Below, in pieces: positions 241 through 63,789 of a stretch of DNA of 64,000 bases. The stretch covers positions 62,001 to 126,000 of the IMG/VR virus record IMGVR_UViG_3300030202_003189, one strand, 5' to 3'. Position 1 is the first letter of the stretch. Each line of letters begins with the position of its first letter. The notes beneath the pieces were generated by a model, which had not been told where the DNA came from, ran no database searches, and was given only the letters and a program-made list of their open reading frames with translations. The position numbers and the translations under genes were made by a program.

Positions 241-248
241 TATTTATA
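241..248 (+). promoter_or_regulatory. putative late promoter element TATTTATA (portal)
   Basis: Same motif recurs in sense orientation upstream of most structural transcription units. Confidence 0.55.
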
Positions 249-266
249 TTAAACAATACGAATTAA

Positions 267-2084
267 ATGGCCAAGAGAAATTTAACAATATATCAGAAAT
301 TACAACAAGTATTTGGTGCGGGGGCAATGAGAAGGACCCCACCAAGTTATAATGTTGACCCAAGTAAAATACTACTTAAAACACCATCAAAGTCTGAGTT
401 CGATCAAGAAAAACTACAGGCTCAACAACAAGCTTTTCTAAAAGGACAATGGAATAAAGTAGATAGTGAGTTATATAACCAAGCCATTTATTATGAAACA
501 ACTAGACTAGCATCATTTTATGATTTTGAGTCGATGGAATTTACACCAGAAATTGCCGCAGCTTTAGATATATACGCAGAAGAAAGTTGTACTCCAGATG
601 AAACAGGAACTTTACTTACTGTAGAATCAGACTCTAGTAGAATAAAAGATATACTAGATAATCTCTTCCATAAGGTTCTTGACCTACACGCGGTATTACC
701 AGCTTGGACAAGAAATACCTGTAAGTATGGGGATAATTTTGTTTACCTAAAAATTGACCCAAAACAAGGTATTATTGGGGCATCACAATTACCAAACATT
801 GAGATAGAGAGAAAGGATGAAAGTAGTTATCTTACCTCACGAAAATCCGGGACCTATGGAGTTGAGGGGGAGGAAGAAAAAGATAAGAACATTAAGTTTG
901 AATGGAGAAATAAATCAATCTCTTTTAACGCTTGGGAAATTGCTCATTTTAGGTTACTAGGAGATGATAGAAGACTACCATATGGAACTTCTTTATTAGA
1001 AAAAGTAAGACGAATCTGGAAACAATTATTATTATCGGAAGATGCTATGATGATATACAGGGTAACTAGAGCGCCGGAAAGAAGAGTCTTTAAGATAAAT
1101 GTTGGTAATATTGATGATCAAGATGTACAAGCATATGTGAATAAGATTGCTAATAATTTCAAAAGAAGTCATGCTATAGATCAAAATACAGGTCAGGCAG
1201 ATTTAAGATATAACGCATTAGCGGTTGACCAAGACTTTTTTGTTCCAGTTCGTAATGACGGAGCTGCTAATCCAATTGAGACACTACCAGGGGCTGGTAA
1301 TTTAGATCAGATTGCTGATATCGAGTACATCCAAAAGAAAATGTTATCAGCTTTAAGAATCCCAAAACCTTTTTTAGGGTTTGAAGAACCAGCGGGAGAA
1401 GGAAAGAATTTAGCACTTCAGGATATTCGTTTTGCTCGAACAATCAACAGAGTTCAACAATCAATGATTCAAGAACTTAATAAGATTGCTATAATACATC
1501 TTTATATTTTAGGTTTTGAGGATGAGTTGGAGAACTTTACCCTAAGATTGCAGAATCCATCAACACAAGCCGAAATGTTAAAAATAGAACAGTTCCAATC
1601 AAAAGTGGCGTTGTATAGAGATTCGGTGTCTGATGCAGGTAATGGTTTTGGTGCAACTTCTATGACTTGGGCAAAGAAAAATATATTAGGTTTTAGTGAT
1701 GATGATATTCTTCTAGATTTAGAAAGACAAAGAATGGAAAAAGCCGCAGCGGCAGAGATGGAGAACACTGCGGAAGTGATAAAAAGTACTGGTATTTTTG
1801 ATGAGGTAGATAAACTATATGGACAGGCGGCGGAAGGTGAAGATGTACCAGCAGAAGATAGCGGTGACGAACCACCAACTCCAGGAGAAGCAACTGGTGA
1901 TGTACCCCCACCGGCAGACGTAGATATGGATGATGATATGATGATGGAAAAGAAGAGTAGTTATGAAAATCTAGTTGATATTGTAAATCTTGATACAAAA
2001 AAGAAAGGTAAAAATACAAAAAGTAATTTAATTAAAGAAGACCTAGAGTACCTAAAAGATAATTTGGACAAACTTTTAGAATAG
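267..2084 (+). CDS. gp20: portal protein, T4 gp20-like
   Basis: PEIAAALDIYAEE, YGTSLLE, LLSEDAMMIYRVTRAPERRVFKINVGN, DFFVP, IETLPG, DIEYIQKKMLSALRIP: typical gp20 motifs. Confidence 0.93.
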   Translation: MAKRNLTIYQKLQQVFGAGAMRRTPPSYNVDPSKILLKTPSKSEFDQEKLQAQQQAFLKGQWNKVDSELYNQAIYYETTRLASFYDFESMEFTPEIAAALDIYAEESCTPDETGTLLTVESDSSRIKDILDNLFHKVLDLHAVLPAWTRNTCKYGDNFVYLKIDPKQGIIGASQLPNIEIERKDESSYLTSRKSGTYGVEGEEEKDKNIKFEWRNKSISFNAWEIAHFRLLGDDRRLPYGTSLLEKVRRIWKQLLLSEDAMMIYRVTRAPERRVFKINVGNIDDQDVQAYVNKIANNFKRSHAIDQNTGQADLRYNALAVDQDFFVPVRNDGAANPIETLPGAGNLDQIADIEYIQKKMLSALRIPKPFLGFEEPAGEGKNLALQDIRFARTINRVQQSMIQELNKIAIIHLYILGFEDELENFTLRLQNPSTQAEMLKIEQFQSKVALYRDSVSDAGNGFGATSMTWAKKNILGFSDDDILLDLERQRMEKAAAAEMENTAEVIKSTGIFDEVDKLYGQAAEGEDVPAEDSGDEPPTPGEATGDVPPPADVDMDDDMMMEKKSSYENLVDIVNLDTKKKGKNTKSNLIKEDLEYLKDNLDKLLE

Positions 2085-2089
2085 TTTTA

Positions 2090-2096
2090 TATTTAT
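2090..2096 (+). promoter_or_regulatory. putative late promoter element TATTTAT
   Basis: Intergenic, 16 nt before ATG at 2113. Confidence 0.45.
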
Positions 2097-2112
2097 TATA
2101 TAAACATACTGT

Positions 2113-2868
2113 ATGAAAAATTTCGGTGATTTACTAGATTCACTATACTCTAAAGCGTCGTCACAATTTGCTAATGATAAAAAAAATTGTAGCAAAATAC
2201 TCAAAGAGTGTATAAACACAATAAAAACAGATAAAATCTTATCTGATCAATTCATAATTTTTAATAATCTTAAAACTTCAGTTGTTGACGAAAAACAAGT
2301 TAACGATTATATAAATGAAAATGTCAATTCAATAAAGTTACATAGAACCAAGGATATTATTAATTCTAATCATAAATTAGAAAGATTATGTAATAAGTTA
2401 GGGACAAAAATTAAGAAAGATGAGTTAAATGAGTCGATATCAAATCTATGTTTCTTAATGAATACGGCTAAGAATGTTAATTCACTACACAAATCAAAGA
2501 ATATAATAAAGGAAAATTTATTGACTAATGAAAAAACAAAGAAAAGTGACACACCGTCAATTCCTTTGGCTTTAATGAGTAAACTTGTTAGTAAAAAGTA
2601 CAATAAAAAATATAGTGATTTAAGTGAATCAGATAAAAAATTACTTAAAACAATTCTTGAAAATAACGAGGGAGACGAAAAACTTTTCCAATCCTATAAA
2701 GAAAACGCAACAAAATTATTATCAAATAAGATAGTTGAGAATGATGACCCTACCTTACATACAAATTTGAAAAAAAGTTATAAGAAGGTATCTAGTATGG
2801 AGTATATAAGTGAGAGTTTAATAAACGATGTGAGTAAATTACATTATTTAATAGAAGGTTTAGGATAG
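2113..2868 (+). CDS. hypothetical helical protein (possible head assembly factor)
   Basis: 251-aa ORF directly after portal; Lys/Asn-rich; no recognisable motif. Confidence 0.6.
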   Translation: MKNFGDLLDSLYSKASSQFANDKKNCSKILKECINTIKTDKILSDQFIIFNNLKTSVVDEKQVNDYINENVNSIKLHRTKDIINSNHKLERLCNKLGTKIKKDELNESISNLCFLMNTAKNVNSLHKSKNIIKENLLTNEKTKKSDTPSIPLALMSKLVSKKYNKKYSDLSESDKKLLKTILENNEGDEKLFQSYKENATKLLSNKIVENDDPTLHTNLKKSYKKVSSMEYISESLINDVSKLHYLIEGLG

Positions 2869-2869
2869 A

Positions 2870-3124
2870 ATGGGAAGACTAACAAACGAAAATCTACACA
2901 GTGAGATTAAAATAGTGAAGAATGATATGATTTACCTTAAAGAAGGTCAAGCAAAAATGCAAGAAGACATTACTATGATTAAAAAAGTATTATTGAATCC
3001 AGACAACGGTACGGTATCAAGAGTAAATAAAAATACAGAGTTTAGAAAATCAACAGGAAAAGTTCTATGGTCCTTATGGATTGCTGTATTAGGGATAATA
3101 GGAAAAATAATATTCTGGAACTAA
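2870..3124 (+). CDS. small coiled-coil protein with C-terminal membrane anchor (holin-associated type)
   Basis: Heptad-like N-terminus and hydrophobic VLWSLWIAVLGIIGKIIFW tail. Confidence 0.55.
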   Translation: MGRLTNENLHSEIKIVKNDMIYLKEGQAKMQEDITMIKKVLLNPDNGTVSRVNKNTEFRKSTGKVLWSLWIAVLGIIGKIIFWN

Positions 3125-3136
3125 AAAATTAAAATT

Positions 3137-3430
3137 ATGAACTTTTTCAAAAACATGTTAAGTAGTGAAGGTAAAGTCTCAAGTAAGAGATTTGTAACTT
3201 TTGTTTGCTTATTATTTATGTTAATAGGATACACAGCTAATCTATTTTGGGATTTTACAATTGAGCCTGACCTATTTGCATCACTACAATGGATTGTAAT
3301 GGCAGGACTTGGTTTTACCGCGGCAGAGAATTTTTCACCTAAAGGTGAGGAATCTCCAGAAGAACCACCGGCACCAACACATACTACGGTAACTCATGAA
3401 TATGACTACCATAATGACGATGACATATAA
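3137..3430 (+). CDS. putative holin (2 TM)
   Basis: SSKR followed by two hydrophobic segments (FVTFVCLLFMLIGY; LQWIVMAGLGFTAA) and an acidic tail. Confidence 0.5.
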   Translation: MNFFKNMLSSEGKVSSKRFVTFVCLLFMLIGYTANLFWDFTIEPDLFASLQWIVMAGLGFTAAENFSPKGEESPEEPPAPTHTTVTHEYDYHNDDDI

Positions 3431-3441
3431 AGAATAAAAAA

Positions 3442-5079
3442 ATGGGTAGACAAAAATATAATAAAAGAAATCATATAGAAAAATCCAATATAATTTTGGA
3501 AAATAATTACTCTAAGAGTAAAGGGTTATTAACTGAACAACAAGCAACACTGGCTTGGTCATGTAATGGGTCACAACTAGTTAGTCATAGTTTTGATGCT
3601 AACATGGTACAACTTGGATTTACTGGTTATTGGGCCTCTGCATCGGGAGCGTTGCCTGTAATATTTGAGGCACAACTACCAACCGGTCCCGGAACTCCTA
3701 CAATGATAAACCAAGGTTTATATAATCAACCAGACGTTACATTAAGTTTTACGGGACCACAACCATCATTAGTGACTAACAACCAAGCATGGTTTCCAGA
3801 TGATTATCCTGGTTTTATGGCACCAGGCGTTATGCAGGGTATTGTAGGAGATATATGTGCTAGTGGTGGAACAATAACAAATGATACAGATTGTTACGAT
3901 TGTGTAAACGGAGTACCAACTGTAGTAGAAATTATAGGACCTAATTCATCTTGGTGTCAAAATGTACCAGGTGGTCCACAATGTGGAACTGATTGTACCT
4001 TAATACCTATGAATGCTGTAGGTGGAGTACTTCAATTCCCTCTAGTAAACGACCCTAACCTAGCTTGTGGACAAAACCAAGCAGATTGGTGGTGTCCAAC
4101 AGGAGTAGCAGGACCAGGTCCTTGTATACAATCACCAACAAACCCTCAACCAGGAATGGCAACAGGACCTTATCCAGATCAACAAACTTGTGACGCTCAA
4201 TGTGGCGGAATCGGACAAGTATCTGGTTGTTTAGATCCAAATTTACCAAATTATGACCCTAATGCAACTTTAGACTGTTCAGGAAATCCACAACCAGCGG
4301 CTGGATACGGAGATACTAATTGTTGTGGTATGCCACCACCGCCACCACCAAGTGGAGGTTGTATGGAATTATGGGTAACCAAATGTGCAGGAACTAGTCC
4401 TGGACACCAAATTGGACAATCAAATCTTCATTTCCCATGTCCAATGGTAGATGGATCATTTGCAGACCCAACTCTTGTTGGACAAGAAGTTGGTATAGAC
4501 CCATCATCAGGACAAGGAGGAGATGACGTATATACGGTAGATGTGGTTAACCCAAACCCTAATTACCCGTCACAATATACACCAAATTCTTATCTAACAA
4601 CTAATGTTAGTTGTACAACAAATCCAGCTAATGCTTCATGTGATTTTTCATGGACTAGTTCTTGTGCACAACAACACTTAAATACAGGAGGACAAAATTC
4701 TTGGCAGAATTTCCTTGACCTACGAGAAACCGGTTTTAATGGGGCGGGATGTCAACATCTACAAAATGTAGTAAATTGGACAACTGACCAGTTAAATTCA
4801 GGAGTTACTGGAGCAGGTGCACCATTAACCCCGAATCAAATAGCTAGAAAAACAGAACAGAGAGACTGGGCACAATGTCAAGCGGCGGAGTGTGGATGTA
4901 GTACACTTAATCTCCCAGCATTAACAGGAGGACCAACACCACCTCCACCAACAGATCCAGATTTAATCGATCCTGAAGTACCTACAGATAAACCAAAAAA
5001 ACCAAAACCAGGTGAAGAAGGAGGATTAAATGAACAGTTTACTAGAATGAAAGAACTGTGGAAGTACAATAAACTATAA
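3442..5079 (+). CDS. Cys/Pro/Gly-rich protein, putative internal head or virion protein
   Basis: Basic N-terminus ending LLTEQ, many Cys, a GCLDPNLPNYDPNATLDC module, C-terminal LNEQFTRMKELWKY. Confidence 0.7.
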   Translation: MGRQKYNKRNHIEKSNIILENNYSKSKGLLTEQQATLAWSCNGSQLVSHSFDANMVQLGFTGYWASASGALPVIFEAQLPTGPGTPTMINQGLYNQPDVTLSFTGPQPSLVTNNQAWFPDDYPGFMAPGVMQGIVGDICASGGTITNDTDCYDCVNGVPTVVEIIGPNSSWCQNVPGGPQCGTDCTLIPMNAVGGVLQFPLVNDPNLACGQNQADWWCPTGVAGPGPCIQSPTNPQPGMATGPYPDQQTCDAQCGGIGQVSGCLDPNLPNYDPNATLDCSGNPQPAAGYGDTNCCGMPPPPPPSGGCMELWVTKCAGTSPGHQIGQSNLHFPCPMVDGSFADPTLVGQEVGIDPSSGQGGDDVYTVDVVNPNPNYPSQYTPNSYLTTNVSCTTNPANASCDFSWTSSCAQQHLNTGGQNSWQNFLDLRETGFNGAGCQHLQNVVNWTTDQLNSGVTGAGAPLTPNQIARKTEQRDWAQCQAAECGCSTLNLPALTGGPTPPPPTDPDLIDPEVPTDKPKKPKPGEEGGLNEQFTRMKELWKYNKL

Positions 5080-5086
5080 ACATTAG

Positions 5087-5110
5087 AAAAACCCCAATCG
5101 GGGTTTTTTT
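5087..5110 (+). terminator. intrinsic terminator
   Basis: AAAAACCCC-AATC-GGGGTTTTTTT stem-loop with U tract. Confidence 0.85.
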
Positions 5111-5170
5111 ATTCAATAATATTTCATAATATTAAGTATCAATAACACTTAGAGAAAAAGAATATGAAAA

Positions 5171-5602
5171 ATGAAATTAGGAAAAGAATTATCTTTGAAA
5201 ACGGAAAAACCATTCAAAATATATATTGGAACGGTCAATAATAAAGAACCAAGAACCTTGTACATGGTTCTATCTAGCTGGGTTGAACCTCTACAAGATT
5301 TAGAAAACTACCAACCACACTTAAATAAAATTACAAAAAACATTAAACGGTTCCTAAGTGAAGTGGTACCTAAAGAAAGTTTCAATAAAGAAAAGATAAT
5401 TGTAGACTTCGACTTACGTTCATCAGGTATAACAAAAAATAAAAAGTCTTTTATGTCATGTGAGGTGACACTTTTTCAAAAGGAACTACGAAAGATAAAC
5501 TCCCCATCAGTTATTATGGAACTTCAATGGTTATCAACTAAATTAATCGGAGAGGTTTTCGAGCCGGATATTGGATTTAGGTACCACTTAAATAAAAAAT
5601 AA
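5171..5602 (+). CDS. hypothetical protein
   Basis: 143-aa ORF bracketed by two terminators. Confidence 0.65.
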   Translation: MKLGKELSLKTEKPFKIYIGTVNNKEPRTLYMVLSSWVEPLQDLENYQPHLNKITKNIKRFLSEVVPKESFNKEKIIVDFDLRSSGITKNKKSFMSCEVTLFQKELRKINSPSVIMELQWLSTKLIGEVFEPDIGFRYHLNKK

Positions 5603-5614
5603 TAAATAACTAAC

Positions 5615-5645
5615 ATAAAACCCACTCTGGTGGGTTTTATTTTTT
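5615..5645 (+). terminator. intrinsic terminator
   Basis: ATAAAACCCAC-TCTG-GTGGGTTTTAT followed by a T run. Confidence 0.85.
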
Positions 5646-5653
5646 CCCCCTTA

Positions 5654-5678
5654 TATTTATAATAAAAACAATATTTAT
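5654..5678 (+). promoter_or_regulatory. two putative late promoter elements (5654-5661, 5672-5678)
   Basis: TATTTATA and TATTTAT between the terminator and the protease ATG. Confidence 0.55.
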
Positions 5679-5682
5679 TAAT

Positions 5683-6372
5683 ATGGAACTTAAATTATTA
5701 AAAGAAGGTGAGGTAGGTTATGGGTTATTAGTAGAAAAGGATTCTGGTTATATTTCACCACAAACTACAGAGAATAAAAAAATTATAAAAGAAATGAATG
5801 AGATGGGTACTAGTTATGGACCTATCCAAATGGTTGCTGTCCTACAGAAATGTGGTGTACAAAATAGAAACGGAAGAGTTTATCCAGAAAACATTCTAAG
5901 AAAAGAAGTAGATAAACATCAGGAAGTAATACAGAATGGTAGGGCGATTTCAGAACTAAATCATCCTGACTCTTCTATTATTGATTTGGAGAGAACGTCA
6001 CATAAGTTGGACGAAACTTGGTGGGATGGTAATACCTTAATGGGAAAACTAACTTTGATAACTTCACCAGCTTACGAATCTAATGGTACTGCAACTACAC
6101 CAGGAGATTTGGCCGCTAATTTACTAAGACATGGAGTACAGTTAGGTATTTCATCTAGAGGGGTAGGGTCCTTATCAAATGTAGGAGGACAGAATATGGT
6201 ACAAGATGATTTTGAATTAATTTGTTTTGATTTGGTCTCGTCTCCGTCAACACCAGGGGCCTACCTATTCAATCAGGTTGAAGAAGCGAAACCTTATGTG
6301 GAATCAAGAAGACCACAAAAAATAATGGAGTCAAAATTAGACGAAACAATTAAAAATTTCTTAAAAGATTAA
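5683..6372 (+). CDS. gp21: prohead protease, T4 gp21-like
   Basis: NRNGRVYP, SELNHP, SH, LGISSRGVGS (catalytic Ser motif), FDLVSSPSTPGAY. Confidence 0.93.
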   Translation: MELKLLKEGEVGYGLLVEKDSGYISPQTTENKKIIKEMNEMGTSYGPIQMVAVLQKCGVQNRNGRVYPENILRKEVDKHQEVIQNGRAISELNHPDSSIIDLERTSHKLDETWWDGNTLMGKLTLITSPAYESNGTATTPGDLAANLLRHGVQLGISSRGVGSLSNVGGQNMVQDDFELICFDLVSSPSTPGAYLFNQVEEAKPYVESRRPQKIMESKLDETIKNFLKD

Positions 6373-6376
6373 AATT

Positions 6377-7588: not shown

Positions 7589-7589
7589 T

Positions 7590-8366
7590 ATGAATTTAAT
7601 AGAAAATATAAAAAAAGAATTAAGATTATTAACTGAGCAAAGCTCTTGGTGGACAACTATGACCTCATGGGCAACAGCAGCAGATGCAGTTAATACTTCA
7701 AATGCACCAGCCACTTCAGATCCAAATACTCCTGCAGCCCCAGGTGTAACAGGTTCATACTCTTCAAATGGTGTGTGTTTTGATTCAGCAGCTAGTACGT
7801 GTCAATTAAATAATAGTTTATCTCACACTCAGAAATGGAATCAATATGTTGCCTGTTTAGATCCTTATGCAACTCCTTGTACTTTAGGTACGAAAGTACA
7901 ACAGGGGACTCCCGGATATAATTCTCAATACGCAGGACAACAGTTATGTATTACACATACCGCTCCCTCCAATGTGACAGGGGGATATTCGCCATATGAA
8001 ATACTTGAACTTAATTCTCCTGATTGTGCAATTGCATCAACTCCATGTGACACAACACCATCTTCACCATGTGCACAACAGTGGTTCCAAAACCCTAACG
8101 CGACATGGGCATCAACTTGGATAACTAATAGAGATTGTTCAAATTACAATTGGCCATCAATTAATTTAGAACAACAAGCAATGGATATAATGAATGACCC
8201 AACAACTCCAAACCCACAAAGTGGTCCTTTTAATAATTGGAATGACATATGGTCAGCAGGTAACGTCGCATGGCCAAATACTACAGGAGCTCCTAAAACC
8301 CAATTCATTGCAAAAATGGCGAAAGCTAAATATGCGCAATGTCAAATACAAGCATGTAACTGTTAA
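7590..8366 (+). CDS. Cys-rich putative internal head protein
   Basis: Leader MNLIENIKKELRLLTEQ; C-terminus AKMAKAKYAQCQIQACNC resembles ARKTEQRDWAQCQAAECGC of the 3442 ORF. Confidence 0.7.
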   Translation: MNLIENIKKELRLLTEQSSWWTTMTSWATAADAVNTSNAPATSDPNTPAAPGVTGSYSSNGVCFDSAASTCQLNNSLSHTQKWNQYVACLDPYATPCTLGTKVQQGTPGYNSQYAGQQLCITHTAPSNVTGGYSPYEILELNSPDCAIASTPCDTTPSSPCAQQWFQNPNATWASTWITNRDCSNYNWPSINLEQQAMDIMNDPTTPNPQSGPFNNWNDIWSAGNVAWPNTTGAPKTQFIAKMAKAKYAQCQIQACNC

Positions 8367-8369
8367 ACT

Positions 8370-8795: not shown

Positions 8796-8846
8796 TATTT
8801 ACTGACAAAATTTCATGTGAACACGTCTTTTTTATGTTCTCAGGTA

Positions 8847-8891
8847 TATTTATTAAAAAACTCCCTACGGAGTTCTTTACGCTTTTGCGTA
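8847..8891 (+). promoter_or_regulatory. putative late promoter (8847-8853) plus two 5'-leader hairpins
   Basis: TATTTAT, then AACTCC-CTAC-GGAGTT (8859-8874) and TACGC-TTTT-GCGTA (8878-8891). Confidence 0.55.
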
Positions 8892-8924
8892 TATTAATAA
8901 CAAAGATTAAAAAAATTAAGTCAA

Positions 8925-10334: not shown

Positions 10335-10359
10335 CACATTTATAAAAAATAATTAAAAA

Positions 10360-12348: not shown

Positions 12349-12349
12349 G

Positions 12350-14988: not shown

Positions 14989-14996
14989 TATAAATA
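14989..14996 (-). promoter_or_regulatory. putative late promoter element TATTTATA (minus strand)
   Basis: TATAAATA on + strand, 12 nt before the ATG at 14976. Confidence 0.55.
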
Positions 14997-18460: not shown

Positions 18461-19180
18461 CTATAAATATTCTGAACTGAACTTATCTCGTATTGATTTG
18501 TATATCCTCTTATATCTTCTCATACCATTTCTAATTTCTTTTGTTGTAAGGGATGTCATTTCACGTATATTATGTAATACTAAGTTTTTGTTAAATTTAT
18601 TATTTCCATTGTTATCACTAAATATAATTTCCCAGTTTTCAAACATATATACTAAAGATTCACCAACAGAACGTTCATTATCTGTAAGTTTTGGGTGTTT
18701 AAGTTCCTCAGTTATTTCATTTATGATATTTGACATTAACTTTTTTAGTGCTTCCTCCTTTTCAATAGAATCTTCGCCTTGAAACTCGACCATGTCATCT
18801 CTTTCCTCTAAGTCTGATGCATAATCCTCATAAGATAATAGAGTCTTAGTTTTTTTACTGTCCTTAATTAATTGCCCTAGTAGATAGTTTTTACAAATAG
18901 TACCAAAATATGAATATGCTTTTTTTCCTTTTTCAGGTTTGAACTTATCACATTTAGTTATTAGAAAAGACAAGGTATCGTTATGGGTATTAATAAAAGA
19001 CATATCATCTCGATAGAGTTTGTATTTTCTTATAATACTTTCCACCATTTTATTTAGAGGGGCGCGTAAATGATCATTATACGCCTTATGTTTTTCAGTA
19101 TAGGTGCTTGCCGTTAGAAAAACCCTAACTGCGGCTTCCTGTTCCTGACCAAAATAAGGTTTTTTCTTACTTCTAGGCAT
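18461..19180 (-). CDS. phage sigma-like factor, T4 gp55 (late sigma)-like
   Basis: KCDKFKPEKGKKAYSYFGTICKNYLL resembles the gp55 region-2 pattern (F.PEK...F.YF..I); helical; 239 aa. Confidence 0.65.
   Translation of the reverse strand: MPRSKKKPYFGQEQEAAVRVFLTASTYTEKHKAYNDHLRAPLNKMVESIIRKYKLYRDDMSFINTHNDTLSFLITKCDKFKPEKGKKAYSYFGTICKNYLLGQLIKDSKKTKTLLSYEDYASDLEERDDMVEFQGEDSIEKEEALKKLMSNIINEITEELKHPKLTDNERSVGESLVYMFENWEIIFSDNNGNNKFNKNLVLHNIREMTSLTTKEIRNGMRRYKRIYKSIRDKFSSEYL
18462..18469 (-). promoter_or_regulatory. putative late promoter element overlapping the end of the sigma gene
   Basis: Minus strand GAA TAT TTA TAG (E-Y-L-stop) contains TATTTATA. Confidence 0.5.
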
Positions 19181-37378: not shown

Positions 37379-37385
37379 TATTTAT
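37379..37385 (+). promoter_or_regulatory. putative late promoter element TATTTAT
   Basis: In the divergent intergenic region, 18 nt before ATG at 37404. Confidence 0.5.
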
Positions 37386-37403
37386 CTATATAAAATAAAT
37401 TAA

Positions 37404-41186: not shown

Positions 41187-41194
41187 TATTTATA
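41187..41194 (+). promoter_or_regulatory. putative late promoter element TATTTATA
   Basis: 3 nt before ATG at 41198. Confidence 0.5.
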
Positions 41195-45128: not shown

Positions 45129-45136
45129 TATATTTG
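45129..45136 (+). promoter_or_regulatory. Bacteroidota-type -7 promoter element TAnnTTTG
   Basis: TATATTTG 24 nt before the polymerase ATG; no exact -33 TTTG seen. Confidence 0.4.
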
Positions 45137-47915: not shown

Positions 47916-47923
47916 TATTTATA
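47916..47923 (+). promoter_or_regulatory. putative late promoter element TATTTATA
   Basis: 16 nt before ATG at 47940. Confidence 0.5.
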
Positions 47924-50433: not shown

Positions 50434-50441
50434 TATTTATA
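50434..50441 (+). promoter_or_regulatory. putative late promoter element TATTTATA
   Basis: 17 nt before the neck gene ATG. Confidence 0.55.
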
Positions 50442-54560: not shown

Positions 54561-54579
54561 ACATTATTTATACTATAGC

Positions 54580-54689: not shown

Positions 54690-54697
54690 TATTTATA
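54690..54697 (+). promoter_or_regulatory. putative late promoter element TATTTATA
   Basis: 4 nt before ATG at 54702. Confidence 0.5.
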
Positions 54698-56526: not shown

Positions 56527-56563
56527 TATAAATAAGTATGAAAAAAGTATGATTTTTTTCATA
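56527..56563. promoter_or_regulatory. minus-strand TATTTATA (56527-56534) plus operator-like inverted repeat
   Basis: TATGAAAAAA (56537-56546) pairs with TTTTTTCATA (56554-56563); direct repeat AGTATGA twice. Confidence 0.55.
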
Positions 56564-56603: not shown

Positions 56604-56610
56604 TATTTAT
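56604..56610 (+). promoter_or_regulatory. putative late promoter element TATTTAT (tail sheath)
   Basis: 43 nt before ATG at 56654. Confidence 0.5.
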
Positions 56611-56653
56611 TATAAAACCAAGAATAACAATAAATTAAAAAATAAAGAAACAC

Positions 56654-59470
56654 ATGGCAAATCAAGTAGTAGTATCACCAGGAGTATATACATCAGAAAA
56701 AGATCTTTCTTTTGTCGCATCCAGTGTAGGGATAACAAGATTAGGGGTATCAGCAGAGACACTAAAAGGACCGGCTAACCAACCTATTTTCGTACAAGAC
56801 TATGACACATACCAAACTTATTTTGGTGGACAAGACCCATCTGTATGGACAGTAGGGAGTACTTTAATACCTAAGTATGAAGGAACATATATCGCTAGAT
56901 CTTATCTAAGTGAATCAAATAATCTTTGGATGACAAGAACTCTAGGTCTTAGTGGATATGACGCAACCGAGGCTTTAGTTATAAATGTAGGTGAGGGTAA
57001 TATGGACGCAACTCAAGCGACACAACAAACAAATACTGCTGGAGGTATCCAATCGGATAAAAGATTTTCAGCTATGACAGCCTGTGTTATTAGAGTAAGA
57101 AAAAAACAAGGTGTTACATTTACTCAACCAAATTTTGCTGTACAAATATTAAGAGTAGGGACAGCACCAGGAATGATAGAGGTTGCGGATGGACAATGGG
57201 TACCTAATGGAATTAATGGAGGAAGTTCAGCTACAGGTATTGCGAGTACTACTAATATACAACCACCAGCTAACGCACAAAATGCAGTTTGGAGTACAGC
57301 TGCGGATGACTTCGTTATACAAACTATGAGGTTAGGTGGTGTAATAAGAGATACTTATGTTGTTAGTTTCAACCCAAACAGTAATAACTACATAACAAAA
57401 GTTCTAGGAACTAATCCATACTATGACTCTACAAATAATAGTGAGGCTAGAATATATGTTGAACAATTCTACCCTAAAGCGATACAACAGTTAGGTAAAG
57501 AATGGGGTGGTACAGCAGGAAACAGTTATCTTGATGGTTTACCACACATGACTTGGTATAACGTACCTTCAGGATGGAGTAATTATACTGACACTTGGCA
57601 ACCAATTGCAACAACAGACGGACCAACTACTCCATGGATTTATTCTGAAGTTAGAGGTCTTGACGTAGAAAAATTATTTAGACTTATTTCTATCGGTGAT
57701 GGTAATGCCGCAAATAAAAACATTAAAACATCTTTCCTTAATTTAGATATTGATAATAAAACTTTTGATATTGCAATTAGATCATATGACGATACCGACG
57801 CTAAACAATCAGTATTAGAGAGTTTCAAGAATTGTAGTATGAACCCAGTTAGTCAAAATTATATTGGTAAAAAAATTGGTACATTAAACGGAGAATATGC
57901 TTTAAGATCAAGATATGTAATGGTTGAAATTGATGACAACGCACCAATAGATGCGTTACCATCAGGATATAAAGGATACCCAACTACAGATGGACCTAAT
58001 ATGAGTGGGGTTACTAATTTCCAAGGGTCTACTTTTAGTACGTTTGAAGATGCACTTCATTCACGTATCCAACCAGATGTGTATTATAATTTAAGTTATG
58101 ATACAGTTAATGACAATGTTAGAAAAACTTATCTAGGTCTTTCTGATAAGATGGGATATGACCAAAACTTATTTAATTACATGGGGTGTGCTACTGTTAG
58201 AGGTACTACTTGTGCTACAGCTTGGACAGGACACACATACGGTTTCCACTTAGATACAAGAGTTTCTGGGTCAACTTTCTTAGGTGATACAAATTTATCA
58301 GATGGAAAACAATGGTTCTCAGGTTCAGTTGGGACATTCCCATTTTATGTTAATTCCGTTGACTATGTTAACGATCCATACTATGGACCTGGATCAGAGG
58401 CACTAGCGGCTAATTCAAAAAACGCATATTACCAGAAGAAATATAGAAAATTTACCGTGGCATTTTATGGTGGTTTTGATGGTTGGGATGTGAGTAGAGC
58501 TAGTAGAACAAATACAGATAGTTGGAGAGAGAATCAAGCGGCGGGATATAATTTAGGGTACGGTAGTGGTACTACAGGACCATATCTTGGAGCTTATACT
58601 TTTAATAAGAACACTGACTGGTATGCTTATTATAACGCAATACAAAAGTTTGCTAATCCAGAAGAGGTTGATATAAATCTTTTTGCAACACCTGGTATCG
58701 ACTACACTAATAATTTAACATTAGTTAATGATACTATTGAGATGGTTGAAGATGATAGAGCTGATTCACTATATATCCTTACTTCAGAGAATTATAAGGA
58801 CCAAACAGTGGATAATGCGGTAGACGCTTTAGAAGACTCAAGTATCTCTAGTAATTATGTTGCGACTTACTGGCCATGGATACAATTTAACGATGTTGAA
58901 AACAACGTAAGGATATACATTCCACCAACTAATGAAGTTTTAAGAAATATGGCGATTACAGATAATGTATCCTTCCCATGGTTCGCAACTGCTGGTTACA
59001 ATAGAGGAATAATAAAAGCTAATAAGGTAAGAATAAATCTAACACAAGATAATAGAGACGACCTATATGAAGCTAGACTAAACCCAATTGCGACATTTAC
59101 AGCGACTGGACCGGTTATTTGGGGTAATAAAACATTACAAACAGCAATGTCGGCACTTGATAGGATTAATGTTAGAAGATTACTTCTTAGAGCTAGAAAA
59201 TTAGTTTCAGCAGTGGCGGTTAGACTAGTATTTGAACAAAATGATGAAATAGTAAGACAAGAATTCTTAAGTTTAGTAAATCCAATTCTAGAAGATATTA
59301 GAAGAGATAGAGGATTAACAGACTTTAAGGTTGTTCTTTCTAATGACCCAGAAGAAATTGATCAAAACAAGTTGACAGGTAAGATTTATATTAAACCAAC
59401 TAGATCTTTAGAGTTTATCGAAATAGAATTTAATATCACACCAACAGCAACAAGTTTTGACGATATATAA
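56654..59470 (+). CDS. gp18: tail sheath protein 1, T4 gp18-like
   Basis: SPGVYTSEKD, KGP, YWPW, PWFATAGYNRG, RDDLY..RLNPI, WGNKTLQ...SALDRINVRRL, IKPTRSLEFI. Confidence 0.93.
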   Translation: MANQVVVSPGVYTSEKDLSFVASSVGITRLGVSAETLKGPANQPIFVQDYDTYQTYFGGQDPSVWTVGSTLIPKYEGTYIARSYLSESNNLWMTRTLGLSGYDATEALVINVGEGNMDATQATQQTNTAGGIQSDKRFSAMTACVIRVRKKQGVTFTQPNFAVQILRVGTAPGMIEVADGQWVPNGINGGSSATGIASTTNIQPPANAQNAVWSTAADDFVIQTMRLGGVIRDTYVVSFNPNSNNYITKVLGTNPYYDSTNNSEARIYVEQFYPKAIQQLGKEWGGTAGNSYLDGLPHMTWYNVPSGWSNYTDTWQPIATTDGPTTPWIYSEVRGLDVEKLFRLISIGDGNAANKNIKTSFLNLDIDNKTFDIAIRSYDDTDAKQSVLESFKNCSMNPVSQNYIGKKIGTLNGEYALRSRYVMVEIDDNAPIDALPSGYKGYPTTDGPNMSGVTNFQGSTFSTFEDALHSRIQPDVYYNLSYDTVNDNVRKTYLGLSDKMGYDQNLFNYMGCATVRGTTCATAWTGHTYGFHLDTRVSGSTFLGDTNLSDGKQWFSGSVGTFPFYVNSVDYVNDPYYGPGSEALAANSKNAYYQKKYRKFTVAFYGGFDGWDVSRASRTNTDSWRENQAAGYNLGYGSGTTGPYLGAYTFNKNTDWYAYYNAIQKFANPEEVDINLFATPGIDYTNNLTLVNDTIEMVEDDRADSLYILTSENYKDQTVDNAVDALEDSSISSNYVATYWPWIQFNDVENNVRIYIPPTNEVLRNMAITDNVSFPWFATAGYNRGIIKANKVRINLTQDNRDDLYEARLNPIATFTATGPVIWGNKTLQTAMSALDRINVRRLLLRARKLVSAVAVRLVFEQNDEIVRQEFLSLVNPILEDIRRDRGLTDFKVVLSNDPEEIDQNKLTGKIYIKPTRSLEFIEIEFNITPTATSFDDI

Positions 59471-59491: not shown

Positions 59492-62400
59492 ATGGCAGAT
59501 CAGTCACCATTATCACCAGGAGTTTATGTATCAGAAAGAGAACTAAGCTTTAACGCACCAAGTATTGGTGCAACAACGTTGGCCACAGTTGGAGAAACCC
59601 TTAAGGGTCCAGCGCAACAACCAATATTCATTGAAGATTATAACGAATATAAAACATATTTTGGTGGGTTAGATACTACGGTTTTTTCTGGTAGTACTAG
59701 ATTAAAATACGGACAACAATATATTGCTAAGAATTGGTTGGCGGAATCAAACTCTATGTGGGCCGTACGTTCATTAGGATACTCTGGATATGATGCGGGA
59801 ACCGCTTGGAATATTTCATTAAACTACGTACCAACCACAAATAATGTGTTTAGATCATTTGGTGGGGGTGGTACTGACGGACACTATAACGGACTAACCC
59901 AAAGAGAATTAGGAGGAACAGGTATACCATATATGGCACCAGACGGTACAATAAGTGCAATGACACTATATAAACCAACTCAATACTCTTTCCCAAACAA
60001 TGCGGGAGCCACATCAGTACAGCCAGGTATGTATAGTGGAGGTACATGGGGATATAACGCAGATGCTGACGGAGGTTCGGCTATAAATGGTACACAATAT
60101 ACTAATGCAGGTGGAGGGGCCAACTTTGGTGCAAACTACCAATCAGCAATAGAGTTAGCTGTAATATTTTCTGCTACTACATATGGAGGGGCTGGTAAAT
60201 TAGTCGTAACAGGTAGTACAGGTGGGAATTCTTTTGCGGGACCATCATCAGAGGCAGCAGGACTTCCTTGGGTTTCAGAATTAACAACAACATCTTATCC
60301 TCTTTGTTTATTAAGTGCAACAACACTAGTAATAACTACGAACTCTTCAGTAGGGGGTGCTGATCCAACAGCATTTACCGCAGGAGGTTCTGAAGGATTT
60401 GAGAGTCCTAGAATAACAACAGGAAGTAACGCAACTACTTTCCCAACTATTCAGTGGAAACCAGCAATTTCAGTACATGATAATGGAGTTAACGCGTCTA
60501 ATGTATCACCAGCAAATATAATACACGCTGGAATGGGGTCAAGAGATGTCAATCCATTAGGTTATCCTGTAACAGGACACACTTTCCAACTAAATTGGAG
60601 GTACGGTAATTATATAGGTGCACATAGTGGAGGGACAACTGGATGGACAGCACAAACAACAGGGACCGTGTATACATGGTCGGCGGCAACTCAAGAAATG
60701 GTGGTCGGAACTCTAAGAAGTAGAGCAAAATATGCGGGTAATACTTATAGTACAAACACTGCGTATAATGGAGGTGCTTGGGGAGTCACAGACTACCAAT
60801 CTCCATCTTTTGGTAATAAGAGTGAATGTGATGGAACAGTTACTACGTGTCCTGAAAAACCATTTAGGACCATCAATACAACAAACTATAAAGAAGATTT
60901 TTATATATCTGGGTATACTAATGGTGCTTCTGTAAATTCACAATTCCTTTATAAGGTAAGTTTAGACCCTAACTCTCAGTGTTATATCACAAAAGTATTG
61001 GGTACAAAAAAACATAATAATTCTCGTCATTTATGGGTTGAAGACATTTATCCTAACACATTACTTAATTTAGCTTCTTCTGCTGTAACATTCTCAAACA
61101 TTAATCTAAATAAGGCAGACACATATAGAAATTATACAGAAACATGGCAACCATTAGGCGCTTTAGAAGGGCCAACAACTCCGTGGATTGTGTCTGAACT
61201 AATGGGTAGTACTCTACATAAGTTATTTAGAGTTATTTTAATACCAGATGGTAACGATGCAAATGAGTTGGTTAAAATATCTATACAAGATGTCGATGTC
61301 TTTACTAAAACTTTTACTCTTACTGTTAGAGAATTTAACGATAGCGATGCGTCCCAAAGAATATTAGAAGGATATACTAACTGTAGTATGAACCCAACAA
61401 GTCAAAACTACATTGGGAAGAAAATAGGAACGGAGAATGGGGAATACCCTGTTAGGTCACGATATATTATGTTGGAAATTGATGAAAACGCACCCATAAA
61501 CGCTCTTCCAAGCGGATTCCAAGGAATCGTCGTTAGAAGCTATAGTGGGTCAACTCATAGTAATGAAGTTTATCAAGACCCACCTGCACAAACAGAAATT
61601 GCAAATGATAGTGGATGGTATGGTAATGAATCACCAAAACCATTTTATAATTTAACTTATAATACAACATCTGACGATATTAAGAAAACTTACTTAGGGT
61701 GGTCCACTAAAAAAGGTATTGACCAAAATTATTTTAACTATAGAGGTCTTGAAACTCTAACAACTACGGCACCATATAAATGTGGTGCTAATGGAACATT
61801 ATGGACTGGAAGAACTAAAGGATTCCACTTTGATAAAAGAGTATCCGGATTAACAACAAGTGACGTACTTCAGTATGAGGTAGGGGCTTATAGTTTTTAC
61901 ACTAGTGGTAGTACAGGAACATTAGTAGGTGATAGTGGAAATTATTATCAAAATAAAGATTATTTGAAATTTACAGTTATTCCTTATGGTGGTTTTGATG
62001 GTTGGGATGAATATAGGATAACAAGAACAAATGCTGACACATATATAATAGGAGGGACAGACTACGGCACATTCTGGTATAATCAGAGTTTTACAACATC
62101 CACTTGTCAAGTAACTGATTATTATGCTTACTATGATGCCATGAGGAAACTAGCCAATCCAGAGGCGACACCAAGTAGCGTATTTACAACACCAGGTATA
62201 GATTATACAAATAATTTAACATTGGTTAATCGAGCAAAAGAAATGATAGAAAATGATAAAGGAGACTCGATTTATATTGTAACTTCAGATAACCCAAGAA
62301 ATCAAACAGTAGATGAAGCTGTAGATAATTTAGAAAACGCAGCATTAAATAGTAGTTATATGGCTACGTATTGGCCTTGGGTAAGGTATAACGATACTGA

Positions 62401-62974
62401 AAATAACGTAAGAATATATATTCCACCTACAGCTAATGTTGTTAGAAATTTAGCATTAACTGATAATGTATCATTCCCGTGGTTCGCAACAGCTGGTTAT
62501 AATAGAGGTAAACTGGATGTTGATAGGGCACAAACAAAACTAACTCAGATTAACAGAGACGACCTTTATGAGGCAAGAATAAACCCAATAGCCACATTTA
62601 ATGGTGCGGGGGTTATTATATGGGGAAATAAAACTTTACAAACAACACAATCAGCTTTAGATAGAATTAATGTAAGACGACTTATGTTAGACCTTAAAAC
62701 TAAAGTTAAAGATATAGGGTTACAATTATTATTTGAACAGAACGACGCTATTGTAAGACAACAATTCTTATCTTTAATTAATCCAGTTCTAGAAGAAGTA
62801 AGGGCAAATAGAGGATTAACAGATTTCAGGGTAGAACTAAATTCAGATGTTAACGAACTAGACACCAACTCTATGACAGGTAAAATATTTGTTAAACCAA
62901 CTAGAACACTTGAATTTATAGAAGTTGAGTTTAACATAACACCATCGAGTACATCATTCACTGACTTAACATAA
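59492..62974 (+). CDS. gp18: tail sheath protein 2, T4 gp18-like paralogue
   Basis: Same N- and C-terminal sheath motifs as sheath 1, with a longer distal insertion. Confidence 0.92.
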   Translation: MADQSPLSPGVYVSERELSFNAPSIGATTLATVGETLKGPAQQPIFIEDYNEYKTYFGGLDTTVFSGSTRLKYGQQYIAKNWLAESNSMWAVRSLGYSGYDAGTAWNISLNYVPTTNNVFRSFGGGGTDGHYNGLTQRELGGTGIPYMAPDGTISAMTLYKPTQYSFPNNAGATSVQPGMYSGGTWGYNADADGGSAINGTQYTNAGGGANFGANYQSAIELAVIFSATTYGGAGKLVVTGSTGGNSFAGPSSEAAGLPWVSELTTTSYPLCLLSATTLVITTNSSVGGADPTAFTAGGSEGFESPRITTGSNATTFPTIQWKPAISVHDNGVNASNVSPANIIHAGMGSRDVNPLGYPVTGHTFQLNWRYGNYIGAHSGGTTGWTAQTTGTVYTWSAATQEMVVGTLRSRAKYAGNTYSTNTAYNGGAWGVTDYQSPSFGNKSECDGTVTTCPEKPFRTINTTNYKEDFYISGYTNGASVNSQFLYKVSLDPNSQCYITKVLGTKKHNNSRHLWVEDIYPNTLLNLASSAVTFSNINLNKADTYRNYTETWQPLGALEGPTTPWIVSELMGSTLHKLFRVILIPDGNDANELVKISIQDVDVFTKTFTLTVREFNDSDASQRILEGYTNCSMNPTSQNYIGKKIGTENGEYPVRSRYIMLEIDENAPINALPSGFQGIVVRSYSGSTHSNEVYQDPPAQTEIANDSGWYGNESPKPFYNLTYNTTSDDIKKTYLGWSTKKGIDQNYFNYRGLETLTTTAPYKCGANGTLWTGRTKGFHFDKRVSGLTTSDVLQYEVGAYSFYTSGSTGTLVGDSGNYYQNKDYLKFTVIPYGGFDGWDEYRITRTNADTYIIGGTDYGTFWYNQSFTTSTCQVTDYYAYYDAMRKLANPEATPSSVFTTPGIDYTNNLTLVNRAKEMIENDKGDSIYIVTSDNPRNQTVDEAVDNLENAALNSSYMATYWPWVRYNDTENNVRIYIPPTANVVRNLALTDNVSFPWFATAGYNRGKLDVDRAQTKLTQINRDDLYEARINPIATFNGAGVIIWGNKTLQTTQSALDRINVRRLMLDLKTKVKDIGLQLLFEQNDAIVRQQFLSLINPVLEEVRANRGLTDFRVELNSDVNELDTNSMTGKIFVKPTRTLEFIEVEFNITPSSTSFTDLT

Positions 62975-62979
62975 TCACT

Positions 62980-63762
62980 ATGAGTAGAAAGTTATTATAT
63001 GAAATAACAATGAGAGCTTATAGTTTTGACTGGGATGATAATATTCTGCACATGCCAACCATGATTAACATGGAAAAAAGAATGGGTAATGGTTGGGAAT
63101 TGGTTAAATTAACAACTGGAGAATACGCGGAATTAAAAGATAATGAAGATTATAGATACCCAGAAGGGGACATTAGGAAAGCTTTTAGTGAGTTTGATGA
63201 CGACGAAGGATTTCTTAAGAATGTAGAAGACAGTCTAAGAAAAAAAGATTTTGCTCCAAGTTTTAACGACTTCAAAGAAGCAGTAATAAAGGCAAAACCA
63301 ATATCAATTATTACAGCGAGACCACAATCCCCAACAACTCTAAAGAAAGGAGTTTCAATGATAATTAATACTGATTTTAGTGATGAAGAAATCGATGAAA
63401 TGGTTAGAAATGTAGAAGAAAACTATGGATTTACTGGTGATTCAGATGAAATTATTGATAAATATATTGAATCAAACTACTATTACCCAGTTTCATTTAG
63501 GGATAGAAACGCCGATATTAAAAAAGGAAAGGGAGACGCTTTAGATAATTTTGTTGAAAATATTGTTAAATCTTTTGAAAAAATGGATAAAAAACTATAT
63601 AATAAAATGAGTGTTGGGTTTAGTGATGATGATGTAGACAACGTAGAAGAAATGATAAAAAAAGTAGAAAATGAAATGGCGGAAAAATATCCCGGAGTTA
63701 AATTTTTTATATATGATACCTCTGAAAGGGGTAAAAACAAATTAATAGTACATACAACTTAG
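62980..63762 (+). CDS. HAD-superfamily-like protein
   Basis: SFDWDDNI (DxD), IITAR, K, VGFSDDD. Confidence 0.65.
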   Translation: MSRKLLYEITMRAYSFDWDDNILHMPTMINMEKRMGNGWELVKLTTGEYAELKDNEDYRYPEGDIRKAFSEFDDDEGFLKNVEDSLRKKDFAPSFNDFKEAVIKAKPISIITARPQSPTTLKKGVSMIINTDFSDEEIDEMVRNVEENYGFTGDSDEIIDKYIESNYYYPVSFRDRNADIKKGKGDALDNFVENIVKSFEKMDKKLYNKMSVGFSDDDVDNVEEMIKKVENEMAEKYPGVKFFIYDTSERGKNKLIVHTT

Positions 63763-63781
63763 ATAATTTTATATTTAGTTA

Positions 63782-63789
63782 TATTTATA
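63782..63789 (+). promoter_or_regulatory. putative late promoter element TATTTATA (tail tube)
   Basis: 41 nt before ATG at 63831. Confidence 0.55.

What the first reader, a model, noticed from the sequence alone, without database searches (positions are those of the whole stretch)
241..63789. Sense-oriented TATTTAT(A) element: a candidate late promoter that is the reverse complement of T4's TATAAATA
Seen: the motif lies in the short spacer before structural units on + (241, 2090, 5654/5672, 8847, 37379, 41187, 47916, 50434, 54690, 56604, 63782) and flips with gene orientation on - (14989, 18462, 56527). I did not see it in sense orientation before the polymerase, cysK, the helicase, the 5171 ORF or the glycosylation block. 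Known: T4 gp55 reads TATAAATA. Inference: this lineage's late sigma reads TATTTATA. The AT-rich background gives many chance hits, so the argument rests on position and orientation.
Basis: partly seen in the sequence, partly recalled or inferred. Interest (0 to 1): 0.65.

Follow-up and report, generated by a model that had tools for sequence, protein, structure and literature searches.

The report
Variant late promoter of T4-like phages
A short DNA word, TATTTAT(A), sits in the gene-reading direction just ahead of the virus-particle genes of this large T4-related phage and its relatives; it is most likely the start signal read by the phage's own divergent gp55-like sigma factor, a new variant of the classic T4 late promoter.

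Summary
Every listed site exists; the minus-strand coordinates are one base off. The window as a whole shows no excess of the word (39 found, 46 expected). Position and strand carry the signal.

- **Own genome (231 kb):** intergenic regions between same-strand genes hold 41 sense and 8 antisense copies. Shuffles give 7.4±2.6. Convergent regions hold none.
- **Relatives:** TATTTAT is the top upstream 7-mer in 61 uncultured relatives (282 sense, 59 antisense). It also stands before terminase, portal, sheath and tube genes in Flavobacterium phage immuto and Microcystis phage Mel-JY01.
- **Control:** T4 gives ATAAATA with the same script.

Geometry points to a promoter. The motif starts either exactly 12 nt before the ATG, the slot of the host −7 box TAnnTTTG (leaderless mRNA), or 17–27 nt before it. 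An A-rich start lies at +12, and no −33/−35 element is conserved.

The 18461–19180 protein is a divergent sigma: phrog_234 at E 6e-4, Sigma70_r2 in 20 of 21 homologues, T4 gp55 structure at Z 8.4. Its family co-occurs with the motif in two complete genomes that have no other recognisable sigma.

Late timing and the sigma–motif link are inferred, not shown. I rate it a new variant of a known kind.

The parts
241..248 (+). gTATTTATA, 26 nt before the T4-type portal gene (267-2084)
   Evidence: TATTTAT is conserved before the portal in 71 of 80 relatives.
2090..2097 (+). aTATTTATT, 23 nt before ORF 2113-2868
5654..5661 (+). aTATTTATA, 29 nt before the prohead protease gene (5683-6372). It directly follows a terminator-like hairpin at 5615-5640. 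A second copy at 5672-5679 lies 11 nt before the ATG.
8847..8854 (+). aTATTTATT after a T-run, 78 nt before ORF 8925-10334
10337..10344 (+). One-mismatch variant CATTTATA, 23 nt before the gp23-type major capsid gene (10360-12297)
14989..14996 (-). gTATTTATA, 20 nt before ORF 13297-14976 (-)
18462..18469 (-). aTATTTATA, 22 nt before ORF 18076-18447 (-). It lies inside the 3' end of the sigma gene.
   Evidence: The same arrangement (sigma gene, then motif) occurs in phage immuto at 78885.
18461..19180 (-). Gene for a 239-aa divergent sigma-family protein (gp55-like), the proposed reader of the motif
   Evidence: phrog_234 'late sigma transcription factor' E 5.7e-4 and 4.6e-5. Sigma70_r2 in 20 of 21 homologues. 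Best PDB profile hits are SigA region 2. The fold matches sigma factors, including T4 gp55 7d7c_F at Z 8.4.
37379..37386 (+). aTATTTATC, 25 nt before the 1256-aa ORF 37404-41174
41187..41194 (+). gTATTTATA, 11 nt before ORF 41198-41599. This heads the unit with the 963-aa virion/tail-spike-like protein.
45129..45136 (+). Contrast: host-type -7 box TATATTTG (TAnnTTTG) before the family B DNA polymerase gene (45161-47878). There is no TATTTAT here.
47916..47923 (+). aTATTTATA, 24 nt before ORF 47940-48521
50434..50441 (+). aTATTTATA, 25 nt before ORF 50459-51580. This heads the unit with a Peptidase_S74 tail-fibre-type protein.
54690..54697 (+). gTATTTATAgtatATG, motif starting exactly 12 nt before ORF 54702-55235. 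The mRNA is predicted to be leaderless.
56604..56611 (+). gTATTTATT, 50 nt before the first of two tail sheath genes (56654-59470)
63782..63789 (+). aTATTTATA, 49 nt before the ORF that starts at 63831
56527..56534 (-). tTATTTATA, 9 nt before a 57-aa ORF. Doubtful member.
   Evidence: It lacks the purine before the motif and precedes only a very short ORF.

Best explanation
R-TATTTAT-W is the single, -10-like promoter element of a phage-specific transcription class. This class serves mainly virion, packaging and lysis genes, so it is probably late. Host RNA polymerase core carrying the phage's divergent gp55-like sigma (window 18461-19180) would recognise the element at about -12 to -5. It would melt the A/T-rich stretch and start at an A about 12 nt from the motif's first T. 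About a third of these promoters in this genome sit so that the start is the A of the ATG, giving leaderless mRNA. The rest give short A-rich leaders of about 5-15 nt. No -35/-33 element is needed, as at T4 late promoters. Shown: enrichment, strand bias, conservation, spacing, sigma fold and co-occurrence. Inferred: promoter activity, start site, timing, and which protein reads it.
For: (1) Strand-specific excess in intergenic DNA: 41 sense and 8 antisense against 7.4±2.6 in shuffles, and none in convergent regions. It is the top upstream 7-mer.
(2) Conservation through divergence. It precedes the portal gene in 71 of 80 relatives at distances of 15-47 nt within otherwise diverged spacers. It is the top 7-mer in 61 non-redundant relatives: 282 sense, 59 antisense, 16.8 expected. 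In cultured Flavobacterium phage immuto it stands before terL, portal, sheath, tube, baseplate, tail fibre and lysis units, but not before SSB, DnaB, RNR, polA or primase. In Microcystis phage Mel-JY01 the count is 11 sense and 1 antisense.
(3) Promoter geometry. There is a sharp peak with the motif starting exactly 12 nt before the ATG: 13 of 55 sites here and 22 in relatives. The host-type box TAnnTTTG occupies the same position at six genes. TSS mapping in Flavobacterium places that box at -12 to -5 (PMC9723704).
(4) A logo of 339 sites shows A 73% just before the motif and 78% A at +12. No TTG appears at -33.
(5) Several sites directly follow terminator hairpins.
(6) The same script on T4 returns ATAAATA as the top word, 16 sense and 8 antisense.
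(7) Sigma evidence comes.
(8) Co-occurrence. The sigma family is present in this genome, four relatives, immuto (E 2.5e-22) and Mel-JY01 (E 1.7e-17). The last two are complete genomes with no Sigma70_r2 hit. RM378 and T4 lack both the family and the TATTTAT bias.
Against: So neither start sites nor timing are shown. Sequence similarity of the 239-aa protein to gp55 is weak (phrog E 5.7e-4; hhalign against T4 gp55 E 0.023, probability 2%). Z 8.4 for a helical protein is within the range of common arrangements. The motif also precedes non-structural genes: a DnaB-like helicase/RNR operon, PAP2, and many unknown genes at 12-60 kb of the genome. The major capsid gene has only a one-mismatch variant. 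No gp45-type clamp was found by Pfam. The co-occurrence rests on few genomes.
Confidence: 0.72

Rival explanations
1. The promoter class is real and is read by the phage sigma, but it is not late-specific. It would be a general middle-plus-late phage promoter that takes over from host-type early promoters.
For: The motif heads a DnaB-like helicase/RNR operon, a PAP2 gene, a T9SS-tailed 1262-aa protein unit and many unknown genes at 12-60 kb. In immuto it also precedes GroES and the glycosyltransferase block. Only two promoter classes were detected in the genome.
Against: In immuto the replication genes (SSB, DnaB, RNR, polA, primase) lack it, while nearly every virion and lysis unit has it. 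In the window polB uses a host-type box.
Confidence: 0.2
2. The RpoD-like sigma encoded outside the window (genome 196015-196818; regions 1.2, 2 and 4) reads TATTTATA, not the gp55-like protein.
For: It is a clear sigma-70 family protein (Sigma70_r2 E 1e-17, r4 E 4e-15). It lies downstream of a host-type promoter and directly upstream of a TATTTAT site. It is also present in three large relatives.
Against: The complete genomes of immuto and Mel-JY01 use the motif but have no Sigma70_r2 match at all. A sigma with region 4 would be expected to leave a -35-like element, and none is conserved.
Confidence: 0.06
3. Host primary sigma reads the motif as a variant -7 box, and no phage factor is involved.
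For: It occupies the same slot as TAnnTTTG and shares T-12, A-11, T-8 and T-6.
Against: It lacks the conserved G at -5 and the -33 TTG that the genome's own host-type promoters have. The same motif is used in a phage of a cyanobacterium, whose host has different promoter rules and SD-led genes.
Confidence: 0.06
4. It is not a promoter. It would be an RNA-level signal (translation, processing, stability) or a compositional by-product of AT-rich spacers.
For: It lies at a fixed distance from many start codons, and the background is AT-rich.
Against: Dinucleotide shuffles and the antisense strand show no excess. There are two spacing classes rather than one. The co-positioning with the host -7 box is exact. 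The motif follows terminators, and it is kept while flanks diverge.
Confidence: 0.04

Closest known systems
Bacteriophage T4 late promoters (TATAAATA) read by gp55 with gp33 and the gp45 clamp
   Same: A single 8-bp A/T-only element in the -10 region. No -35 element. An A/T-rich region downstream. It lies before virion genes on either strand. It is read by a small, very divergent sigma with a region-2 fold (PMC2988020).
   Different: The consensus is TATTTATA, with the two central A's replaced by T's. TATAAATA itself is not enriched in sense (7 against 35). The sigma is 239 aa with an extra helical C-terminal part and no T4-like acidic/hydrophobic clamp-binding tail. No gp45-type clamp was detected. 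Many promoters give leaderless mRNAs.
Late promoter variants predicted in other T4-related phages (KVP40, 44RR, S-PM2; Aeh1 with a/gC at -13/-12)
   Same: Lineage-specific variants of one theme, found in silico before structural genes (PMC2988020).
   Different: Those variants keep the AAATA core. This one changes the core and so reads as the reverse complement.
Bacteroidota sigma-A promoters (-33 TTG, -7 TAnnTTTG)
   Same: Same position relative to the start (-12 to -5), with TA at -12/-11 shared. In this genome both kinds can sit exactly 12 nt before an ATG (PMC9723704).
   Different: No -33 TTG, A instead of T at -7 and A instead of G at -5. It is also used in a cyanobacterial phage.

Membership tests
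T4-type late promoter system (gp55/gp33/gp45) | A single A/T-only element at the -10 position with no conserved -35 element | tested here: met
   Logo of 339 sites: the only upstream signals are a purine at -1 and a weak T about 15 nt upstream, and there is no TTG.
T4-type late promoter system (gp55/gp33/gp45) | Consensus TATAAATA on the non-template strand | tested here: not met
   Upstream sense counts are TATTTATA 35 and TATAAATA 7. The T4 control gives ATAAATA as the top word.
T4-type late promoter system (gp55/gp33/gp45) | Placed before virion, packaging and lysis genes | tested here: met
   Portal, protease, sheath, baseplate J unit and the likely terminase gene next to the portal in this genome. 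terL, portal, sheath, tube, baseplate, fibres and the lysis unit in immuto.
T4-type late promoter system (gp55/gp33/gp45) | A gp55 homologue is encoded | tested here: inconclusive
   phrog_234 E 5.7e-4 and 4.6e-5. 7d7c_F Z 8.4, 122 residues aligned, rmsd 4.5. hhalign against T4 gp55 only E 0.023. The A1 profile finds nothing in T4.
T4-type late promoter system (gp55/gp33/gp45) | Sliding clamp gp45 as activator | tested here: inconclusive
   PF09116 and PF02916 find nothing in this genome (70% complete), a 93%-complete relative, or complete immuto. Pfam may miss a divergent clamp.
T4-type late promoter system (gp55/gp33/gp45) | gp33 co-activator | not tested
   No search was made.
T4-type late promoter system (gp55/gp33/gp45) | Late timing, dependent on replication | not testable with these tools
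Bacteroidota sigma-A promoter | -7 box TAnnTTTG with -33 TTG | tested here: not met
   A at the positions of T-7 and G-5, and no -33 TTG. True host-type promoters are present elsewhere in the genome for comparison.
Sigma-70 family (the 18461-19180 protein) | Region 2 domain | tested here: met
   Sigma70_r2 in 20 of 21 homologues, best E 8.5e-6. SigE region 2 at Z 8.7, rmsd 2.7, 91 of 91 residues. Nearly all Foldseek hits are sigma factors.
Sigma-70 family (the 18461-19180 protein) | Region 4 helix-turn-helix | tested here: inconclusive
   No Sigma70_r4 hit in any homologue. Two-domain alignments to ECF sigmas span residues 11-232 but with rmsd above 15.

The most novel reading that the evidence does not exclude
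A globally abundant clade of distant T4-like phages shares one late-transcription system that differs from T4's. The sigma family has more than 7,800 relatives in metagenomes, and hosts include Bacteroidota and Microcystis. A two-domain gp55-like sigma would read a core-inverted element, TATTTATA. It would work without a gp45-type clamp or a -35 element, independently of host phylum. It would often start directly at the AUG, so that late mRNAs are leaderless.
Probability: 0.3. Interest if true: 0.7.

Novelty: new variant of a known kind. Interest (0 to 1): 0.55.

Why it matters
It gives a usable rule for finding late transcription units in a large, mostly uncultured phage clade from seawater and lakes. 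It names the unannotated gene that probably sets this specificity; the homologue in the cultured phage immuto is filed as 'hypothetical protein'. It extends the known range of gp55-type promoter recognition beyond the AAATA core. The same motif occurs in phages of Bacteroidota and of a cyanobacterium, so specificity appears to travel with the phage rather than the host. The exact 12-nt spacing also predicts frequent leaderless mRNAs in phages of hosts where such mRNAs are rare (about 5.5% in Flavobacterium, PMC9723704). A cultured pair, immuto and Flavobacterium sp. LMO8, makes all of this directly testable.

Tried and rejected
- **Near-identical phage DNA:** none in the phage collection.
- **PHROG and Pfam scans:** most virion-region proteins stayed unnamed. 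The early/late split in this genome therefore rests on few named genes.
- **Direct sequence link to T4 gp55:** phmmer and the A1 profile against PDB gave only weak SigA region 2 hits. hhalign against T4 gp55 was weak, and the A1 profile finds nothing in T4 or RM378.
- **Host-dialect idea:** I considered that the motif derives from the Bacteroidota -7 box. I dropped this as the main explanation when the Microcystis phage showed the same motif.
- **Phage-encoded RNA polymerase:** Pfam PF00940 and PF00623 find none in the 231 kb held. The PF00940 control rang nowhere, so that half is uninformative.
- **E. coli-type promoters:** not enriched in the window's first 20 kb scanned (1-20000) (64 against 82.8 in shuffles).
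- **Literature:** searches for the motif as a phage promoter found nothing relevant.
- **RM378:** no TATTTAT bias; TATTTAA-like words recur there but were not analysed further.
Full report
**Context.** The window is bases 62001-126000 of a single 231,285-bp virus contig (IMG/VR class, linear, CheckV completeness about 70%), with 34% G+C. It encodes several T4-type virion proteins:
- a portal (267-2084);
- a prohead protease (5683-6372);
- a gp23-type major capsid protein (10360-12297);
- two tail sheath paralogues (56654-59470 and 59492-62974);
- a Peptidase_S74 fibre-type protein.

It also encodes a family B DNA polymerase (45161-47878), an SNF2 helicase (52785-54560, -) and a cysK-like PALP enzyme (12350-13261, -). 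The closest named phages by capsid protein, at about 41-44% identity, are Microcystis phage Mel-JY01 and Flavobacterium phage vB_FspM_immuto; Rhodothermus phage RM378 is more distant at 35.5%. A type IX secretion sorting domain on a phage protein, together with Bacteroidota-type promoters, points to a Bacteroidota host.

I called genes with a simple ORF rule (234 genes, 95% coverage). I then compared the sense and antisense strands of upstream regions.
- TATTTAT is the most enriched 7-mer: 59 sense, 22 antisense, 3 expected. TATTTATA scores 35 sense against 7 for the T4 word TATAAATA.
- In intergenic regions between same-strand genes, where sense is unambiguous, there are 41 sense and 8 antisense copies.
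- Three hundred dinucleotide-preserving shuffles of those same regions give 7.4±2.6 (maximum 17) for sense. The antisense count is at expectation (8 against 8.9).
- Convergent regions (981 nt) hold none.
- In the window alone the counts are 8 against 1.

**Conservation.** The portal protein retrieved 80 related loci from IMG/VR at 57-85% identity.
- TATTTAT precedes the portal gene in 71 of them, at distances of 15 to 47 nt in spacers that have otherwise diverged.
- In 61 non-redundant loci (626 kb) it is again the top upstream 7-mer: 282 sense, 59 antisense, 16.8 expected.
- Loci whose portal spacer lacks it still use it before neighbouring genes. One example is 12 nt before the 577-aa gene upstream of the portal, probably terL by its position.
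- In cultured Flavobacterium phage immuto (first 150 kb read) 33 sense sites precede terL, portal, sheath, tube, baseplate, tail fibre or spike units and the unit with endolysin and holin.
- In immuto, SSB, DnaB, RNR, polA and primase lack it. The early region carries about 25 copies of a different, host-type promoter, GTTGC-N17-18-TATATTTAGG.
- In Microcystis phage Mel-JY01, whose genes have GGAG ribosome sites, the motif stands before terL, portal, the sheath unit and tube: 11 sense and 1 antisense.
- The same script on the T4 late region returns ATAAATA as the top word (16 sense, 8 antisense). There TATTTAT has the opposite polarity. This validates the method and confirms the polarity difference.
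- RM378 shows no TATTTAT bias.

**Anatomy.** Aligning 339 distinct sites gives the following:
- A (73%) just before the motif, then TATTTAT, then A or T;
- an A-rich patch peaking at 78% A twelve bases after the first T;
- a weak T preference about 15 nt upstream;
- no TTG at the -33 position.

Distances to the start codon fall into two classes. One is a sharp peak at exactly 12 nt: 13 of 55 sites here, with six identical TATTTATAGTATATG, and 22 in relatives. The other is a broad class at 17-27 nt.

The genome's host-type promoters (TTG, about 19 nt, TAnnTTTG) also sit exactly 12 nt before ATGs at six genes. TSS mapping in Flavobacterium psychrophilum places that box at -12 to -5 and finds 5.5% leaderless mRNAs (PMC9723704). 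So TATTTAT(A) occupies the -10/-7 slot. The 12-nt class would start at the A of the ATG (leaderless). The other class would give short A-rich leaders. Several sites follow terminator-like hairpins directly, for example 5615-5640 before 5654.

**Who reads it?** Several lines mark the 239-aa protein at 18461-19180 (-) as a divergent sigma factor.
- It hits the PHROG family 'late sigma transcription factor' weakly (E 5.7e-4, and 4.6e-5 in the six-frame search).
- It belongs to a very large metagenomic family, with more than 7,800 hits.
- Twenty of 21 sampled members match Pfam Sigma70_r2 (best E 8.5e-6).
- The family profile's best PDB matches are region 2 of SigA.
- An AlphaFold model (pLDDT 74) matches almost only sigma factors.
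- In the second-look alignment, sigma-E region 2 scores Z 8.7 (rmsd 2.7, 91 of 91 residues). T4 gp55 in the late open complex (7d7c_F) scores Z 8.4 (122 of 137 residues, rmsd 4.5).
- Direct hhalign to T4 gp55 is weak but co-linear in region 2. By eye the two share a C-x-N stretch where sigma-70 has WWIRQ; this last point is my own reading.

The genome also holds a clear RpoD-like sigma (regions 1.2, 2 and 4) at genome position 196015-196818. Co-occurrence separates the two candidates.

| Genome | TATTTAT bias | gp55-like family (A1) | Sigma70_r2 hit |
|---|---|---|---|
| This genome | yes | yes | yes (RpoD-like) |
| Four large relatives | sense excess in the 21.6-kb loci read from three (L013 8/0, L025 9/5, L007 9/6); the fourth (G004, L078) not examined beyond its portal spacer | yes | yes above cut-off in three; the fourth shows only a weak hit at the gp55-like gene |
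| immuto (complete) | yes | yes, E 2.5e-22 | none |
| Mel-JY01 (complete) | yes | yes, E 1.7e-17 | none |
| RM378 | no | none | yes |
| T4 | no | none | not searched |

In immuto the sigma gene lies downstream of an early-type promoter and is followed at once by a TATTTAT site, as in the window. This is the expected order: early promoter, then sigma, then late promoters.

**What is not shown.** No transcript data could be obtained. 'Late' rests on gene content. The motif also heads a DnaB-like helicase/RNR operon, a PAP2 gene and many unknown genes at 12-60 kb of this genome. In immuto it heads GroES and the glycosyltransferase block. The capsid gene has only CATTTATA. No gp45-type clamp was found by Pfam in this genome, a 93%-complete relative or immuto. 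gp33 was not searched. The sigma's C-terminal helical part could be a region-4-like domain, but this is unresolved.

**Comparison with what is known.** T4 late promoters are a single TATAAATA at the -10 position, with no -35 element and A/T-rich DNA downstream. Related phages keep near-identical words (PMC2988020). The element here works like that but fails the consensus test: TATTTATA differs at the two central positions, which makes it the reverse complement as a string. The fixed spacing to start codons and the A-rich start site show that it acts in the sense orientation, so no flipped mechanism is needed. It is not a Bacteroidota sigma-A promoter, because it has no -33 TTG and carries A in place of T-7 and G-5. 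Searches of the held literature found no description of this motif as a phage promoter.

**Verdict.** It is a new variant of a known kind, of moderate interest, and directly testable in a cultured phage-host pair.

Noticed in passing
genome 2827, 6593, 16938(-), 28153, 213010, 225206 (outside the window); window 45129-45136: Host-type Bacteroidota promoters (TTG, about 19 nt, TAnnTTTG) sit exactly 12 nt before ATGs, which predicts leaderless early mRNAs. The family B DNA polymerase in the window has TATATTTG 32 nt upstream.
   Followed up: partly
genome 196015-196818 (L094:1357-2160), outside the window: A second, RpoD-like sigma factor (regions 1.2, 2 and 4; 267 aa). It follows an N6/N4 DNA methylase in a unit with a host-type promoter. 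Homologues occur in three large relatives but not in immuto or Mel-JY01.
   Followed up: partly
window 56654-59470 and 59492-62974: Two adjacent, unusually long tail sheath paralogues (938 and 1160 aa), each with both sheath Pfam domains at the C-terminus.
   Followed up: no
window 10360-12297: The major capsid protein is 645 aa. The Gp23 domain's best-scoring stretch covers residues 371-632 (a second, shorter stretch was not shown), and tblastn matches to relatives come in two pieces covering about 55-59% of the protein. This suggests a large N-terminal or inserted region.
   Followed up: no
L083:13021-16809 (genome 33021-36809): A 1262-aa phage protein ends in a type IX secretion C-terminal sorting domain (Por_Secre_tail, E 8e-12). 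This is a Bacteroidota hallmark, and the unit is headed by a TATTTAT site.
   Followed up: no
L090:16889-18754 and L084:11507-13960: Phage-encoded Hsp70/DnaK (E 6e-253) and a ClpB-like double AAA+ protein, both behind host-type promoters.
   Followed up: no
window about 54561-54625 (- strand, upstream of the SNF2 helicase): Three copies of ATCATTA(G/A), 17-18 nt apart, lie between the divergent helicase and the 54702 gene. They could be an operator-like repeat.
   Followed up: no
Flavobacterium phage immuto NC_055915.1, 60-76 kb (L108): About 25 small genes are each preceded by a near-identical early promoter cassette, GTTGC-N17-18-TATATTTAGGTATCAATAATTAAAAC. The gp55-like gene (78174-78872) is annotated 'hypothetical protein'.
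   Followed up: partly
window 19182-37290 (- strand): A long block of glycosyltransferase and sugar-modifying genes lies upstream of the sigma gene. The same order (glycosylation block, then sigma region) is seen in immuto, where the block is preceded by a TATTTAT site.
   Followed up: no
Rhodothermus phage RM378, L111: TATTTAA/ATTTAAA-like words recur before several genes near the capsid gene. An annotated small sigma factor sits two genes upstream of that gene. This may be a different late motif in that lineage.
   Followed up: no
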